Positions 19,677-64,000 of a stretch of DNA of 64,000 nt are shown here, piece by piece (position 1 is the first letter of the stretch; every line of letters starts with the position of its first letter). The notes beneath the pieces are model-generated. The model was not told the DNA's origin and searched no databases. It saw only the letters and a list, made by a program, of their open reading frames with translations. The stretch comes from Obrimoposthia wandeli. Its lineage: Eukaryota. The stretch covers positions 186,001 to 250,000 of the forward strand of contig CDROCS010001737.1 of NCBI GenBank assembly GCA_977020255.1, given 5' to 3'. A program made the translations under genes and the position numbers.

Positions 19677-21063
19677 GTAGGTTTTTGACTTATCTATAAT
19701 TTTGGCTGATAGTAGGATGTGATAACACAAATCGGGAATGTGTTGAATATGTTGGTAAAACATTCAGCTTTAGCAGAGCACAGATCCGTACTTGTAGGAC
19801 TGAGCCTTGTAAATAACAAGAAGTTCATGAATTCCGGAAGAGACTGTATTTTATCCCCAAAATAAATAATGTATATTAGTTGCCATAATGCGAGCCATGT
19901 AGAGGGCATATTACCGAAGTGAATGAAGAGTGACAGAAAATACATATGTAAACCTCGACTTGGTCAGCGTACGTTTATTCGCTAGTTGACTTATCATCTA
20001 GCGTTTGAGAGGAAGTCTGGAGATATGATCAAATAGTTGTAATAATCCTGGGTATCAGCTTCAGAAGAACTCAGACGAACTGTAGTTAATGTATAATTTT
20101 GATTTCCGTTACTGGCTTTAATTTTAAATTTTCTATGATAATTATAATTCTGCGTCTTTCATTGTATGGTACTTTTTTTACTTATTGTATTTATCGTTAT
20201 TTTCAATTATTTTTAGTGACTTAAATAAATCTCATACAAATCTCGAGGTTAAATGGTTTCTTTTTCCAAATATACGAAGACTATAAGTTGACATATAGCG
20301 ACGAATTAAGATATTAAAAAACTGGTTCTTCCACTAATTGTAGATATTATTGTCCAATACGAAGAAGCAAAATTAACGTTCTTTTTGTCTTCAGTAAAAT
20401 CAGACTAACAGAACGGTTAAGAAAATTATTTTTAGGATGATTAATTTCTTATTTAGATTTTTTATGTATCTTTTCTATAAAAATTAAATAAAAAGTTATA
20501 AATTAAATATTCTAAAATTTTCTAATGAAAGATGATTAATTCAAATACTAAACATTCAGTTAATAAAAAAATATCAGTGGCTTATTTTTCATTTGTGAAG
20601 AGCGCCGGCGACATAATCAGCCAGCTGCTCAGTTTACAAAAATTATTCCTCCGAAATGTCTGGATAACCATTCCGCATCAATACGCAAAATATGCACCTT
20701 GATGTGCCATGCACGACAGAGGCCCTTTTATTAAATCATTTTAAGGAAAGTTAATATAGTCAAATCTTCTCAGCATATGAAATTTTCAAGTTTCATAACA
20801 TTTTAATATAAATAATATTTTATTTTTAATTTAACATACTTTGTTATAGTTCGTTTTTAAAGGAACATAATGTTTTAGGCTTGTAGCACTGAAACTTTTA
20901 TGATTTATTTACTTTAATGGTAAAATAATTAAAACATTATGTTAGTCTACTGATAATATACTAAGTAGCTAAATTATGACTTTTTTATTTCCTTTTTAGG
21001 TAAATAAATTTTACACTTCTGTAAATTTCAAATAACTGACATGGGTTAAAAATGCATTGACAG

Positions 21064-39922: not shown

Positions 39923-40917
39923 TATTCAATTTTTCCAATAAACAGTTCGGAGAAAATATTTTCCAATTTAGATTCAAACTGTCTTTAGGATTCGCATTTT
40001 CCTTTCTAAACTGTTAAATTTAATTTGTCTTTTGGATTTAAATTGTCCTGTCTAAAATATTAAATTCAACTTGTTTGTCCTTACTAAAAAATATCAGATT
40101 CAAATTGTAATTACAAATAAGTCTTCTGGCGATTTTAGTTTTTATGTCAATTGAATTACTGGGGTATTTTATTGTTTTTGGCAGTATATACTGCCGTTTT
40201 ATAAATGGCAGCTGCACTGATAATTCTGCTGAAATTCTGCCCACACCGCGTATCCTTTCCCCAGACTTACACCAGGGACAAAACCACACACAGACAGGGA
40301 AGAACTGTGTATGCTCGCGACAAGAGAGATCGTCGTAAAAAATGTTTGATAATAAACAAATACACACAGACATGCATAAAAACACAAGTGAGTAAGTGAA
40401 TAGTGAGTGTGTGAGTGAATATATGCGTTAGTGTGTGCCATAATTGCTGTGTGTGTGGTGCATGTTCGTGCATTTGAGCACATTTTTGATGATCCTTTGG
40501 ATTGTCGGGGACTGACAACAAAAAAGGAAGTAACAAATGCCAAAGTGCATTTACTAATTTATTTTAATGAATATGTAATTAGGGGTAACTATAGAGACTT
40601 TGTACGTAATTAATAGCGTATTTTGAAATCCAATTTCCATAAAAAATAAAACGACAATATACATCAATTCAAATAGTGTTTTTGTATTAAAGTACAAATA
40701 TATACAAAAGTGTTATTCCTCTATACAAACATTTATTTATGATAAAAATCGGTAGCTTATTTCTATTTATTGATACATTTTGGAATTTCCAACAGATATT
40801 TGAATGTTAGTAATGTCTTCAAATAACAAATTAATGAGCAATCAATGAATCTTTTCCAATTGACAAATTTAATAAACAGTTGGATTAACAATTGTGTCTG
40901 ATGAAAAATAAATTATG

Positions 40918-41930
40918 TGTAGTTTATTCTGCAATGGGGATTATAAGTAAAGCAGAAACACACACAAAAATCAATATCAGGAGACAGCTAGTGAAATCAG
41001 TCACTCGAAGCCAAGTCGACAATCAGGCAGCCAATCCACGCAGGTAGTTCTCGAGACAGGGAAAACGAGAGACTGATGTTGATGTTGTCGCCACGGCCGT
41101 TCCAACAGAGGGATATGGCTGATTGAAAAAGATCCAGTAGTGGACACAGAGGGAGAGAGAGAGATTGTCACTGGCCAAAGATTGGTGGCAGTGGTTGTCC
41201 ATCCCTCTGCCCAAACAGTGCCACACACTGCGCACATAAACACGCAGAAGACTGCCGCCGCCGAGAGAAGAGAGGAAGGCAAGACAGGAAGGTGTGGAAG
41301 GTGTGGAAGGAGGTCTGGAGCTCTGCTTTATGCGTCAAGGCAGATCGGGGTAGGGCGTGGCTCTGTGCTACCTGGACGACTTTGTGCAGGTAAGTGTTTT
41401 TCTTCTTATCTATTTGTCTTTTTAATCTCTGACTTCGCGGGCAAAGCCAGAGATATATCTGCCATCCCCCTGACGAGCCCGGTAGGGCGAAACCGGTTAA
41501 GCCGGTCGGGGACTGACAAAAAGAGATAACCAAAAATGCCAAAGTGCATTTCTTATTAACCCGAATAAACATTTCCCTAATTAAGGAAATTTTTTCCAGT
41601 TATTTCTTAATTAAAGAAATAATTAAAATTTTAAAAATTAATTTTTCTTTTACAAACATGTCCACAACAAAATTATAAAAATTTCACTGAATTAATCCAA
41701 TTAAATCGAATATAAAAAACACATATTTTCAAAATTTTTATATTAAACAATTAAATGAGTCTTGATTAAAGTTTCTTTCTTTCAAATTTTACATCATTGT
41801 AAACATAATCAGATTTAATTTTCGATTTATATTCAAAAAAATTTCAAGTCTAAACTTTGAACAGGCCATATTGATTCAACAATTTTTTATGAAATTGTGT
41901 TTCGTGCTAAGTGTTATAACAATCCCAACA
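40918..41930 (+). mobile_element. Nested LTR-like element carrying an intact hammerhead ribozyme
   Basis: tatg|TGTAG...CCCAACA|tatg. CAG|GTAAGT at 41390, hairpin 41425-41454, hammerhead, AATAAA at 41564. Confidence 0.85.
41465..41512 (+). ncRNA. Type I hammerhead ribozyme, canonical core, predicted cleavage after C41507
   Basis: TCCCC | CTGACGA | GCCC GGTA GGGC | GAAA | CCGG TTAAG CCGG | TC | GGGGA: all core nucleotides and stems I-III present. Confidence 0.93.
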
Positions 41931-59896: not shown

Positions 59897-60520
59897 TGTT
59901 TCCTTAATTATAAATTTTCCTAATTGATTTATTAATTAAACCATGCACTTGGGCATTTTCTGTTTTGGTCAATCTTCGACCGGTTTAGCCGGTTGTGCCT
60001 TATCAGGCTCTTCATGGAGATGGCTTATCTCTAACTTTGCGTTTTGAAAACGCCTGCAAAGCCAGATATAAGAAAGTAGGGTTTTCTCCCTCAACCATGG
60101 GCTGACAATCTACGCCGGCACATGGCATTAAGGCACACATACAGGCTGCAAAATGTCACACACAGCAATCATTTACACACTCTCACTACTTACTTAAATA
60201 TTCACTCACTAATCACCTCTACTCACGCATTGTTTTCGTGTGTAAGAATGTGGTGGTTACAATTTTCCCATCTGCCCAGAGTGCAAGCAGGCGGCGAGAA
60301 TTCTCGGCTGCACATGTGTGTGCAGAGTCAAGAATTGCAATCGGCAACATCATCATCTTGCAATTTCCCACCTGTCCAAATTCTCTTATTCTCTCAGGCT
60401 TGACAGTTGATAGTCACATCGGTCACACTGCCTTCTTCGGCAGCAACAACGACAAATGTCAACCATCTGATCGGTTGCTATAAATAGTAACACACTTTTG
60501 AGATTTCCCTACAACAAAAA
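59897..60520 (-). mobile_element. Inverted copy of the hammerhead-bearing family (decayed core)
   Basis: Minus strand reads hairpin, TCTCC-ATGAAGA-GCCT GATA AGGC-ACAA-CCGG CTAAA CCGG-TC-GAAGA, then AAAATGCCCAAGTGCAT. Shares a CTGCAC..GTGCAG hairpin with 61884-61915. Confidence 0.75.
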
Positions 60521-60976: not shown

Positions 60977-62688
60977 TATTTATGGAATTGATTTTTATTT
61001 ATGGTATTCATTTATGTTGAATTGTAAAGTTTTATTAGTGTGTGTTTATCGTTAATTTTATTATAGGTTATGGAATTCATTCTGCCTATTGTATTTGACC
61101 GAGTGTAGCAGCACTGGTTGTCGCCAGAGCATGGACGCGGGTAGAGAGAGTAGGAGAGTGCGTCTGCAGATTGGACTGCACCGAGATGAACCGACAGGGA
61201 GAGATTATCGCTGTATTGTCGAGGGACAGAACGAGGGCGGTAGTAGATAGTGATAGAAAAAGATGGTCGCTGTCTGGTTTTGTCGCGGCCGCCACAGAGA
61301 AGTAGCGGTCCACTAGATTTGGTTATCCTGGGCGCAACTTGCTAAGGATAAAATATAATTTGGTCCTCAGTGGTCCACTCGATCTGCAATCGACTCTCAC
61401 TCGCCATCCTTCAATCCCGCCACTTGTTATATCTGGCTTCGCGGGTGTTCGATCACCGCGAAGACAAATAACATTCGCCAACCGCAGGAAAAAATAGCCT
61501 AAATAACTGGAGGTCGCGGTTAAACTATCTTATCCACCTGATTGTGGGAATTTGTTATTGTAATAATTAATAATCAATTTCTTCAATAGGAAAATATTTT
61601 ATTTCAGAGATTTAATAATCACAAATTTGGATACAACGATAATTGTAATTCAATCAATAATCGTCTGATTCTGGGCAATTGAGAATAATTTTATAATTCA
61701 ATCAATAATTGTCTGATTCTGGGCAATTGAGAATAATTCTGCAAGCAAAAATTTCAGATCGTTTATGAAAAAATAATAATTTTATTTTTCTGGAACCGCA
61801 ATCCAAAAACACGCCCTAAATGTTGCTTTTCTACAGACAGCGGGGAAAATCCATAATTGGGCAGAGAGGAAACTGGTATTTCCCGGCTCTGCACACACGC
61901 ACATGTGCAGCCGGGAAATTTCACCGTCTGTATATATTCTGGGCAAGCGGAAAATGCCAAATTAAATATACACATATATTAGTAATTTTTGATTCGCGAA
62001 TTTTTACTTTCCCAAATAAATGTATAACAAAACTGCAATAATTCACTCTTGATTTATTGTCGAAAACAAATTGTGGATAAATTGTAAGATTGTTTTTGTG
62101 TGCTTATTTTCAAAATCCACTTGTATATATTTCCACGGAGAGTGTGACTGGACAACTCCGCTGCATCAATCGAGCGGATAGAAAGGCAGGCCCACATCAG
62201 TCGGCCTCGTCCATGACTGGCGAATTCCGCAGTTATCACGATGGCGACACTGCGGCACACCGCCGTTGCCACCGGTAGGAGAAACGGTCAGAGAGACAAG
62301 AGCTGGGGATTAGTCTGCAAACCACCGAAATGTCAAACTGTCAGGAACAATCTGCTGCAGAAGTTGGTCCGGCATAGACTGGTTGAGAGTGGGTGGTGGT
62401 TCTGTATATCCTGGGCATCTTCCTCCATGTAAGTGTTTTTATTTTCATATCTCTGACTTCGCGGGAATTTCATCCACTGCGAAACCAGAGATAAGTTTGC
62501 CGTCCCCCTGACGAGCCTGGCAGGGCGAAGCCGGTCGGGACTGAACTAATAAAACTGATTATAAAATGCCAAAGTGCATTTCACTTACCCTAAAACATTT
62601 CCCTAATTAAGGAAATTTTCTCTCGTTTTTTCTTAATTAAGAAATATTTTAAATTGTATTTTTATTTTTTTTAATTGTAATCCTAACA
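60977..62688 (+). mobile_element. LTR-like (possibly composite) element with two hairpin/hammerhead modules
   Basis: Ends AATCCTAACA|cata. Tentative start cata|TATT (TG decayed). Modules at 61427-61521 and 62429-62582. Confidence 0.55.
62502..62541 (+). ncRNA. Minimal type I hammerhead ribozyme (GAAG instead of GAAA, palindromic CCGG stem III)
   Basis: GTCCCC | CTGACGA | GCCT GGCA GGGC | GAAG | CCGG | TC | GGGAC. Confidence 0.75.
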
Positions 62689-62810: not shown

Positions 62811-64000
62811 CAGTGGTGGGATTCAAACTGTTTAGCAACCGGTTCGCTCATTTACCGGTTGATGTGGAATTAAATCAATTTTTCCGTGTGTGGTTAATAA
62901 TAAACAAGTCCAATTAATCATTTTATTTACCATCATATTCCAAATATTTCCAGATTGATAATTCATTAGAATTATAAGAACTATTAGATGAATGCTTCAC
63001 TCTTTTATCATCAGCTGTGTGGTGTTTTCTTAGCCACGTTTTAACAGAATCCATAGAATCCCATAAATTAAGAGGAAGACCAATTAACTTTATTACCATA
63101 AGATTTGCGACATTTTGAACTTCAAGACGATTCCTTTTATCGCTATATATCACATTCATAACTGAAAATCCGCGTTCCGCTTCAGCAGAACTCAAAGCAA
63201 TTGTATTAATAATATTTTTTGCTTTTTGTATTGTAGAAGGAACATCTTCATTGGGACGGTTTTCTATAACATTTTCTACATAGTCACGGAAATCGTTAAC
63301 GCATATTTTATGGTGAAACTGCTTATAGAATCCGGGTAATTTTTCTTCAGCTTGTTTCCACGGTACAACAACTTCATCAATATCCCATGATTCAGGGCTA
63401 ACGATGTTTACTAAACAGTGAATTTTGTTATCAATTTCTTTGGAGTTTTTGCTTGCTTTTATTTCATCAGAATCCATCAATCTTAGTTTCATATTTTTTA
63501 TAATAGAATCTAACAGGCTTTGGCGAGGAAGGTTAATATATTTCTTATTTTGAACAAACTTAATATGAAGAAATGCATCAGAAGCAACAGTCTCGTCAAT
63601 TTTTGTTTCATAAGAACCTTTCATTTCTTTCATAATTTCTAGCGCCTTGATTGACCTTTTTATTAACTTTTCGGCTCGTGGCAAATTTAAATTTCTACAT
63701 TGTAGAGCATTTGAAAGTAATGATATTTCCTTTAATATATATATCATTAAAGCTAAATCCTCAAGGAAATATCTGTTTGCAAAACGCTTGGCCATTCCTG
63801 TGAACTTTTCTTTGCTACTAAAATAATCAAATAATGCAGGGTAAGCACGCCATACTGCAACTGTTGATCTAAGACTGCAAGCAGCCCATCTCGGTCCTAA
63901 AACTCTACCAATTTTTAGAATTTCTATTCCAAGTTGTTCGGAAATTTTGAAAAGTTCCATTTGGTTCTTATTTGACTGGTGAAATATCTTGTAAATTTCA
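62811..64000 (-). mobile_element. Young hAT transposon, 3' part
   Basis: CAGTGGTGGGATTCAAA terminus at 62811 and an uninterrupted transposase ORF. Confidence 0.85.
62923..63999 (-). CDS. hAT transposase, KIAA1586/ZNF862-like, 5'-truncated by the window edge
   Basis: Open frame continues to the edge (IYKIFHQSNKNQMEL). RWAACSLR..AVW..YPAL and SSAEAERGFSVMN..SDKRNRL are hAT dimerisation motifs. Confidence 0.9.
   Translation of the reverse strand, partial: EIYKIFHQSNKNQMELFKISEQLGIEILKIGRVLGPRWAACSLRSTVAVWRAYPALFDYFSSKEKFTGMAKRFANRYFLEDLALMIYILKEISLLSNALQCRNLNLPRAEKLIKRSIKALEIMKEMKGSYETKIDETVASDAFLHIKFVQNKKYINLPRQSLLDSIIKNMKLRLMDSDEIKASKNSKEIDNKIHCLVNIVSPESWDIDEVVVPWKQAEEKLPGFYKQFHHKICVNDFRDYVENVIENRPNEDVPSTIQKAKNIINTIALSSAEAERGFSVMNVIYSDKRNRLEVQNVANLMVIKLIGLPLNLWDSMDSVKTWLRKHHTADDKRVKHSSNSSYNSNELSIWKYLEYDGK

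What the first reader, a model, noticed from the sequence alone, without database searches (positions are those of the whole stretch)
40918..41930. Intact type I hammerhead ribozyme inside an LTR-like TG...CA element with a 4-bp TSD
Seen: a perfect hammerhead (41465-41512: TCCCC/GGGGA stem I, CUGACGA, GCCC/GGGC stem II, GAAA, CCGG/CCGG stem III, GUC site) inside a 1013-bp non-coding unit bounded by TATG|TG...CA|TATG. Established: animal type I hammerheads are known mainly from Penelope-like elements and non-LTR retrozymes, which lack TG...CA ends with 4-bp TSDs; LTR retrozymes with 4-bp TSDs are known from plants, where Ty3/gypsy is the proposed mobiliser. Inference: this is an integrase-inserted, LTR-type ribozyme element in an animal-like genome, which I do not know to be described.
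Basis: partly seen in the sequence, partly recalled or inferred. Interest (0 to 1): 0.92.

Follow-up and report, generated by a model that had tools for sequence, protein, structure and literature searches.

The report
Backward hammerhead ribozyme in a solo LTR
The stretch is a lone terminal repeat left by a very abundant virus-like jumping gene of this animal, and it carries an intact self-cutting RNA motif on the strand opposite the element's genes, an arrangement I found in no paper searched.

Summary
The hammerhead at 41465-41512 is real and canonical: intact core, three helices, cleavage predicted after C41507. The right end of the unit (…CAACA, 41930) is a true terminus.

The left boundary and the "TATG" duplication are wrong. 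Homology among copies runs about 109 bp further left, the left TATG is conserved inside the repeat, and the true start is near 40809.

- Related copies occur as 99.5 % identical pairs about 13 kb apart.
- They have TG…CA ends, perfect 4-bp target duplications, a TGG-type primer site, a purine tract, a gag ORF and a 3'-terminal DEDDh exonuclease ORF.
- The window copy is an old solo LTR.

It is not a retrozyme. The elements appear to be autonomous, and the ribozyme lies antisense to gag and the exonuclease in every intact-ended locus checked.

The motif occurs 389 times (one variant) and 1160 times (a second variant) in the genome. Compensatory stem changes indicate selection.

Its most likely role, which is inferred, is to cut RNA transcribed backwards through the LTR. 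No RNA data exist.

Earlier notes of this scan on other DNA of this genome reached the same antisense reading.

The parts
40809..41930 (-). Solo LTR, about 1122 bp. The sense orientation of the retrotransposon is the window's minus strand. The left boundary is good to about 5 bp.
   Evidence: The right end CAACA is shared by the copies. The left end follows from L036/L038/L033, which start TGTAATGTCTTC or TGTTATGTCTTC, and L036 has the TSD CATT/CATT. There is no gag or exonuclease similarity anywhere in the window. The flanks are neither the primer-site side nor the purine-tract side of an internal region.
41465..41512 (+). Type I hammerhead ribozyme motif. Predicted cleavage is between C41507 and G41508.
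   Evidence: Covariation among 32 copies: 7 pairs changed on both sides against 2.7 in shuffles.
41425..41454 (+). Hairpin just upstream of the ribozyme (ATCTCTG…CAGAGAT). It is longer in most other copies.
   Evidence: Read. This block is among the better conserved ones (0.84-0.92 column identity). Its function was not tested.
41387..41396 (+). Splice-donor-like CAG|GTAAGT, 75 nt upstream of the ribozyme.
   Evidence: It is present as GTAAGT, GTACGT or GTATGT in several subfamilies. It is absent from the second hammerhead variant's LTR. Whether it works as a donor was not tested.
41520..41930 (+). AT-rich, most conserved part of the LTR. In the element's own orientation it is the 5' part of the LTR, next to the purine tract.
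   Evidence: Column identity is 0.9-0.98 over 29 copies. In copies that keep internal DNA it directly abuts the …GGAGGAT purine-tract side.
40809..40917 (+). It holds one copy of a 39-bp repeat, which occurs 7 or more times in L036.

Best explanation
Window 40809-41930 is an old solo LTR of a very abundant family of roughly 13-14 kb LTR retrotransposons. These elements are integrase-inserted, with TG…CA ends and 4-bp target duplications.

In their own orientation the full-length elements read:
- LTR;
- a primer-binding site starting TGG;
- gag with three CCHC knuckles;
- a long pol-containing frame;
- a DEDDh (RNase_T) exonuclease ORF;
- a purine tract;
- LTR.

Each LTR carries one type I hammerhead on the opposite strand. 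The element's own genomic RNA therefore holds only the inert complement.

The ribozyme can act only on RNA transcribed backwards through the LTR. That RNA could be read-in from the flank or an LTR-born antisense transcript.

Most likely it cuts such RNA in cis. The products would carry a 2',3'-cyclic phosphate end and a 5'-OH end. The cut would separate the capped 5' part from whatever follows: the element's interior for a 3' LTR, or host DNA for a 5' LTR or a solo LTR. This would limit antisense RNA of the element.

Shown: the identity of the unit, the family architecture, the strand relation, the copy numbers and the covariation.
Inferred: that the motif cleaves, and what the cleavage is for.
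For: LTR nature:
- Two 1320-bp copies on one contig lie 12.76 kb apart and are 99.5 % identical. Their flanks are unrelated, their ends are TGTTA…CAACA, and the TSD is TATG/TATG.
- Further perfect 4-bp TSDs flank solo copies, and one copy has a 5-bp TSD.
- Same-strand hammerhead pairs 11.7-15.6 kb apart occur about 5 times among the first 100 hits of variant 1 and about 25 times among the first 100 hits of variant 2.

Orientation:
- TT+TGGTAAGCCCGAC… follows one LTR, and …GAGAACCGGAGGAT precedes the other.
- A gag ORF (Retrotrans_gag, three CCHC knuckles) starts 1.2 kb after the primer site.
- An RNase_T ORF ends about 180 bp before the purine tract.
- gag and the exonuclease lie on the same strand, about 8.3-9.7 kb apart, in 7 elements.
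- The hammerhead is on the opposite strand in 10 of 10 loci where both were listed. The same holds in 4 window-family loci.

Selection on the RNA structure:
- Covariation exceeds the shuffles and the slid controls.
- The second variant keeps all three helices through double changes. It has a U·G pair that would be a mismatch on the other strand.

Abundance: 2539, 4489 and 15522 first-look candidates for the LTR, the exonuclease and gag respectively.
Against: - No RNA data exist for this organism in the run index, so neither antisense transcription nor cleavage is shown.
- Rfam's hammerhead models do not reach their gathering scores.
- Within decaying copies the ribozyme block is less conserved than the AT-rich tail.
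- The primer tRNA could not be found with a T-loop-anchored pattern.
- The superfamily was not established here. The integrase hits listed did not fall inside known pairs.
- The window copy itself has no recognisable TSD.
- One locus (L021) has the exonuclease on the same strand as the unit, but that LTR is truncated at its end.
Confidence: 0.55

Rival explanations
1. One reading: a non-autonomous LTR retrozyme. Its sense transcript would be cut by the LTR hammerheads, circularised and mobilised by a Gypsy integrase, as in plants.
For: The family has TG…CA ends, 4-bp TSDs and a hammerhead in each LTR. Some same-strand pairs are only 6.7 kb apart and could be shortened derivatives. Other first-stage notes mention tandem ribozyme arrays.
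Against: The same LTRs flank gag and exonuclease ORFs and frames up to 2911 aa. The ribozyme is antisense to the primer site and the purine tract, so a cut RNA would lack a usable primer site. The hammerhead is type I, not type III. The window copy is unpaired.
Confidence: 0.07
2. The hammerhead is a passenger. A piece of a Penelope-like element or of a non-LTR retrozyme was captured in an ancestral LTR and is now carried along without function.
For: [quoted passage not shown] The genome has GIY-YIG ORFs with 600-aa frames that may be PLEs.
Against: The motif is an integral part of both LTRs of intact elements. It is kept in at least three diverged LTR lineages whose exonucleases are only 35-40 % identical. 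Compensatory changes are present. More than 1500 near-perfect copies exist. Twelve GIY-YIG loci show no similarity to the unit and no hammerhead. An ancient capture followed by retention is not excluded.
Confidence: 0.12
3. The hammerhead is an intronic part of an LTR-born antisense transcription unit. The GC-rich middle of the LTR would supply a promoter and a first exon ending at CAG|GTAAGT, and the ribozyme 75 nt into the intron would compete with splicing to set the level of a spliced antisense RNA.
For: The donor-like site is conserved as GTAAGT, GTACGT or GTATGT across subfamilies. A pyrimidine tract plus CAG lies at 41590-41599. The best Rfam resemblance is to the intronic HH9.
Against: The LTR carrying the second hammerhead variant lacks the donor. 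No transcript data exist. The acceptor and the promoter are only read from the sequence.
Confidence: 0.15
4. Chance resemblance to a hammerhead in a GC-rich patch of a repeat.
For: The Rfam score is below threshold and the fold energy is not exceptional.
Against: All core positions and all three helices are present. Genome counts are 389 and 1160 copies against 0 for the reversed controls. Covariation is present.
Confidence: 0.02

Closest known systems
Plant LTR retrozymes (Cervera, Urbina and de la Peña 2016, PMC4918200)
   Same: There is a hammerhead in each LTR, TG…CA ends, 4-bp target duplications, and the primer site and purine tract logic of Ty3/gypsy-type elements.
   Different: Those are non-coding, 600-1000 nt between short LTRs, with type III hammerheads in sense to the primer site, and they give circular RNAs. 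Here the LTRs are 1.1-1.4 kb, the elements are protein-coding and 13-14 kb long, the hammerhead is type I, and it is antisense.
Metazoan non-LTR retrozymes and Penelope-like element pLTR hammerheads (PMC7229834, PMC4209133, bioRxiv 10.64898/2026.07.22.740005)
   Same: Both are type I hammerheads in an animal retroelement repeat. The window also holds a shortened-stem-III variant, as in PLEs.
   Different: Those are tandem 150-450 bp repeats or pLTRs without a primer site, purine tract or TG…CA ends, and with longer or variable TSDs. Here the features are classical LTR ones, and there is no similarity to the GIY-YIG loci sampled.
Ty3/gypsy-type LTR retrotransposons and their solo LTRs
   Same: The architecture is LTR, TGG primer site, gag with CCHC knuckles, long pol frame, purine tract, LTR. 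TSDs are 4 bp, and solo LTRs are abundant.
   Different: These elements carry a conserved antisense self-cleaving ribozyme in the LTR and a 3'-terminal DEDDh exonuclease ORF. The superfamily assignment itself was not tested here; it rests on a weak Retrotrans_gag hit and on earlier unchecked notes of this scan.
Intronic amniote hammerheads HH9/HH10 (Rfam RF02275)
   Same: Both are type I with a stable stem III. HH9 is the best Rfam resemblance, and a donor-like site lies upstream.
   Different: The score of 22 bits is far below the gathering score of 52. This motif is not a conserved single-copy intronic element but part of a repeat with thousands of copies.

Membership tests
Hammerhead ribozyme, type I | Conserved core: C3-U4-G5-A6-N7-G8-A9, G12-A13-A14, the A15.1-U16.1 pair, and H17 at the cleavage site. 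| tested here: met
   41470-41476 reads CUGACGA, 41489-41491 reads GAA, A41492 pairs with U41506, and position 17 is C41507.
Hammerhead ribozyme, type I | Three helices, with stem I open and stems II and III closed by loops. | tested here: met
   The minimum-energy fold gives exactly this. 90 % of cells are paired over 32 copies, against 24-49 % when the partners are slid.
Hammerhead ribozyme, type I | Helices supported by compensatory changes. | tested here: met
   7 of 16 pairs have changes on both sides, against 2.7 ± 1.3 in shuffles (1 of 500 shuffles reach it). The second variant swaps C-G to G-C in stem III, and C-G to U-A and U-A to C-G in stem I.
Hammerhead ribozyme, type I | Reaches the gathering score of a curated Rfam hammerhead model. 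| tested here: not met
   No hit at gathering score. HH9 scores 22 bits against 52. The models are family-specific, so this lowers the match to those curated families, not the motif call.
Hammerhead ribozyme, type I | Self-cleavage. | not testable with these tools
   This needs in vitro transcription or RNA end mapping. No RNA runs are available.
LTR of an integrase-type LTR retrotransposon | TG…CA termini. | tested here: met
   The family ends are TGTAA/TGTTA…CAACA. The window copy has CA at 41929-41930 but AG instead of TG at 40809-40810.
LTR of an integrase-type LTR retrotransposon | Short target-site duplication flanking the insertion. | tested here: met
   For the family: 7 perfect 4-bp TSDs and one 5-bp TSD among 11 insertions examined. 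For the window copy itself the feature is not met (TGTT against TATG).
LTR of an integrase-type LTR retrotransposon | Occurs as near-identical direct pairs around an internal region with a primer site, a purine tract and gag-pol. | tested here: met
   One pair is 99.5 % identical and has all of these features. Many pairs are spaced about 13 kb apart. RT and integrase inside these pairs were not seen directly.
LTR retrozyme (plant type) | Non-autonomous: no coding capacity between the LTRs. | tested here: not met
   gag, the exonuclease and frames up to 2911 aa lie between the LTRs.
LTR retrozyme (plant type) | Hammerhead in sense to the primer site and purine tract, so that the element's RNA is cut at both LTRs. 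| tested here: not met
   The ribozyme strand is opposite to the primer site, gag and the exonuclease.
Non-LTR retrozyme / Penelope-like element | Tandem short repeats or pLTRs, no primer site or purine tract, RT plus GIY-YIG partner. | tested here: not met
   The copies are dispersed 1.1-1.4 kb units with LTR features. There is no similarity to 12 GIY-YIG loci. The 600-aa GIY-YIG frames could not be fetched.

The most novel reading that the evidence does not exclude
A large, apparently autonomous family of animal LTR retrotransposons keeps a self-cleaving ribozyme on its antisense strand as a working device. It destroys or processes antisense transcripts. That could blunt antisense-RNA-based silencing of the element, or it could shape an antisense regulatory RNA. 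Either would be a new biological role for hammerheads and a new kind of retroelement-ribozyme association.
Probability: 0.3. Interest if true: 0.85.

Novelty: new variant of a known kind. Interest (0 to 1): 0.68.

Why it matters
Reviews and surveys up to 2026 tie animal type I hammerheads to Penelope-like elements, non-LTR retrozymes, SINE-like repeats, satellites and a few introns. They reserve LTR-borne hammerheads for non-coding plant retrozymes.

Here a hammerhead is a conserved module of the LTRs of a protein-coding animal LTR retrotransposon family with thousands of copies. It sits on the strand that the element does not use for its genome.

If it cleaves, two things follow. Ribozymes would have been recruited by LTR elements in animals too. 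They would serve a purpose other than releasing the element's own RNA, possibly the control of antisense RNA.

The many near-identical copies make this easy to test by RNA end mapping.

Tried and rejected
- My first working idea was a 5'-truncated non-LTR or Penelope-type repeat, because copies share a fixed 3' end and have variable starts. I rejected it. The "truncations" are different 5' modules of LTR subfamilies, and TSDs and LTR pairs were then found.
- I first read the 600-bp sequence that follows CAACA in 5 of 30 copies as a separate repeat, or as 3' transduction. It is the purine-tract end of the internal region, carrying the exonuclease ORF on the other strand.
- Fetching the 600-aa GIY-YIG loci and more full-length elements failed.
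- The rve family search gave 33056 candidates, and none of the 150 listed fell within known pairs. The superfamily is therefore not settled here.
- The gag homology search in the protein database found nothing.
- The RNA run search found DNA holders only.
- The primer tRNA pattern gave no match.
- A column-conservation profile of a 640-bp non-coding stretch was computed only to score conservation. No consensus is reported.

Full report
**Observation**

The sequence at 41465-41512 is a textbook type I hammerhead:
- stem I is UCCCC/GGGGA;
- the core CUGACGA lies at 41470-41476;
- stem II is GCCC-GGUA-GGGC;
- GAA follows;
- stem III is ACCGG(U)…(G)CCGGU;
- the cleavage-site base is C41507.

ViennaRNA returns exactly this fold as the minimum-energy structure of 41455-41520. 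The energy itself is unremarkable (z = -1.22). A loose hammerhead pattern hits once in the 64-kb window, against 0.11 expected. Rfam reports no hammerhead at gathering score. A local search gives only a weak hit to the intronic HH9 model (22 bits).

**The unit is a repeat with a true right end and a wrong left end**

A genome search with 40918-41930 found 2539 first-look candidates. In 30 fetched copies the right end …CCCAACA is fixed and the DNA after it is unrelated.

The left part (unit 1-373) is much rarer, with 43 candidates. Copies that seemed 5'-truncated turned out to carry other 5' modules, shared within subfamilies.

In 10 copies that do share the window's left part, homology continues 30-100 bp beyond 40918. 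Members of the same subfamily start TGTAATGTCTTC (L036, L038) or TGTTATGTCTTC (L033). L036 has a perfect CATT/CATT duplication. This places the window start at about 40809, where A replaces the first T. The flanks there are TGTT and TATG and do not match. The TATG|TG…CA|TATG observation is therefore not confirmed for this copy.

**The family is a true LTR family**

On one contig two 1320-bp copies of a related unit lie 12.76 kb apart in the same orientation. They are 99.5 % identical and their flanks are unrelated. They begin TGTTATATT, end CTCAACA, and are flanked by TATG/TATG.

Solo copies show further perfect 4-bp duplications:
- TATA, CTAT and TAAG;
- ACAT and AAAA;
- CATT;
- one 5-bp case, AAAAC.

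In three insertions, the window's among them, only 2 of 4 flank bases match.

Exact-pattern searches show how common full-length elements are. The 38-nt core of variant 1 occurs 389 times. A second variant occurs 1160 times at up to two mismatches. The reversed controls give zero. Among the first 100 places listed, about 5 same-strand pairs (variant 1) and about 25 (variant 2) are spaced 11.7-15.6 kb apart. This contradicts an earlier first-stage note that such units never have a partner.

**Orientation**

Read on the strand opposite to the hammerhead, the paired element has these features in order:
- directly after one LTR, TT followed by TGGTAAGCCCGACAAGGAC, a classical primer-binding-site form;
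- 1.2 kb further on, a 425-aa ORF with a Retrotrans_gag match and three CCHC knuckles;
- near the other end, an ORF with a full-length RNase_T (DEDDh exonuclease) match (E = 3e-8);
- about 180 bp after that ORF, a purine-rich …GAGAACCGGAGGAT immediately before the second LTR.

On the hammerhead strand neither junction looks like a primer site or a purine tract.

The genome holds more than 4489 exonuclease candidates and 15522 gag candidates. Many are 94-99 % identical, and open frames around gag reach 2911 aa. gag and the exonuclease lie on one strand, about 8.3-9.7 kb apart, in seven elements.

Wherever a listed hammerhead and a listed exonuclease fall in the same element (10 loci), they are on opposite strands at a constant distance. 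Four loci of the window's own subfamily show the same (L018, L011, L028, L014). Their exonucleases are only 35-77 % identical to the first one, so the association is old. One exception, L021, has an LTR that is truncated at that end.

The sequence that follows CAACA in 5 of 30 copies is this internal end, not a second repeat.

The window has no gag or exonuclease similarity. Its copy is therefore a solo LTR, and an old one, 81-93 % identical to its relatives.

**Is the ribozyme kept by selection?**

Over 32 distinct copies:
- 90 % of pair cells are standard pairs, against 24-49 % when the partners are slid;
- 7 of 16 pairs show changes on both sides, against 2.7 ± 1.3 in shuffles;
- 11 cells show double changes, against 3.1 in shuffles.

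The second variant belongs to a different LTR with a much shorter tail. It keeps the whole core and changes stem III C-G to G-C, and stem I C-G to U-A and U-A to C-G. It also has a U·G pair, which only makes sense on this strand. Between diverged LTR lineages the ribozyme block is one of the few shared stretches.

Within decaying copies the block is less conserved than the AT-rich tail, as expected for a CpG-rich patch.

**Mechanism**

Because the motif is antisense, the element's genomic RNA carries only its complement. The ribozyme can act only on RNA made backwards through the LTR.

I think the most likely role is cis-cleavage of such RNA. The source could be read-in from flanking DNA or transcripts that start in the GC-rich middle of the LTR. 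Cleavage would detach the 5' part from what follows and limit antisense RNA over the element.

A related rival is an LTR-born spliced antisense RNA. A donor-like CAG|GTAAGT 75 nt upstream is conserved in several subfamilies, but the second variant's LTR lacks it.

A neutral passenger captured from a Penelope-like element cannot be excluded as an origin. It does not fit the covariation and retention.

None of this can be checked against RNA: no RNA run of this organism is indexed.

**Comparison with what is known**

The papers searched place animal type I hammerheads in:
- Penelope-like elements;
- non-LTR retrozymes;
- schistosome SINE-like repeats;
- satellites;
- a few introns.

They describe LTR-borne hammerheads only in plant retrozymes, which are non-coding, type III and sense-oriented. 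The present arrangement shares the LTR location and the 4-bp TSD with plant retrozymes. It fails two of their defining features, non-autonomy and sense orientation. It is best called a new variant: a type I hammerhead as an antisense module of the LTRs of a protein-coding animal LTR retrotransposon.

**Earlier notes of this scan**

I saw these only after I had derived the orientation. Other windows of this genome were read in the same way: an antisense hammerhead in the LTRs of Gypsy-type elements, with a DEDDh exonuclease among the cargo. I count these as agreement, not as evidence. The Gypsy assignment itself I could not test.

**Verdict**

The hammerhead observation is right and the boundary and TSD observation is wrong for this copy. 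The LTR and integrase inference is right for the family. The retrozyme-like reading is wrong in two respects: the elements are protein-coding, and the ribozyme is antisense. The phenomenon is real, abundant, and undescribed in the library searched.

Noticed in passing
window 20598-20730 (-): U11 minor-spliceosome snRNA gene, 108.5 bits, full length. It shows that the host has a minor spliceosome.
   Followed up: no
window 62436-62658 (+) and 59943-60040 (-): Two further pieces of the same LTR module. The one near 62479 has a hammerhead with an 8-nt deletion that shortens stem III. The one near 60000 is decayed.
   Followed up: partly
window 40504-40552: A 49-bp fragment 84 % identical to unit positions 588-634, just upstream of the solo LTR. 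It is probably the remnant of another copy.
   Followed up: no
window 62923-63960 (-): A 345-aa ORF with a hAT dimerisation domain (E 3.6e-5). It is a DNA-transposon remnant.
   Followed up: no
L045:93-833 (+), and over 4489 candidates genome-wide: The last ORF of the retrotransposon, just before the purine tract, is a DEDDh (RNase_T) exonuclease. I know of no other LTR retrotransposon with this cargo. Lineages differ by up to 60-65 % at the protein level.
   Followed up: partly
L036, reverse strand, about 1125-1385 in that orientation; window 40813-40880: A 39-bp tandem repeat at the primer-site end of the LTR. Its copy number varies from one in the window to seven or more in L036. A 62-bp tandem repeat lies between the primer site and gag in other copies.
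   Followed up: no
genome places listed (contigs C423, C46): Three same-strand hammerheads are spaced 13.5 and 13.4 kb apart, which suggests an LTR-internal-LTR-internal-LTR array. Two pairs are only 6.7 kb apart and may be shortened derivatives.
   Followed up: no
L065 (C5434:12656-15877): This locus has 46 % G+C and bacterial-looking tRNA-Glu and tRNA-Ala genes next to a GIY-YIG hit. It may be bacterial or organellar DNA in the assembly.
   Followed up: no
genome places listed: About 20 GIY-YIG matches lie inside open frames of about 600 aa. They are candidate Penelope-like elements. They could not be fetched to compare their hammerheads.
   Followed up: no
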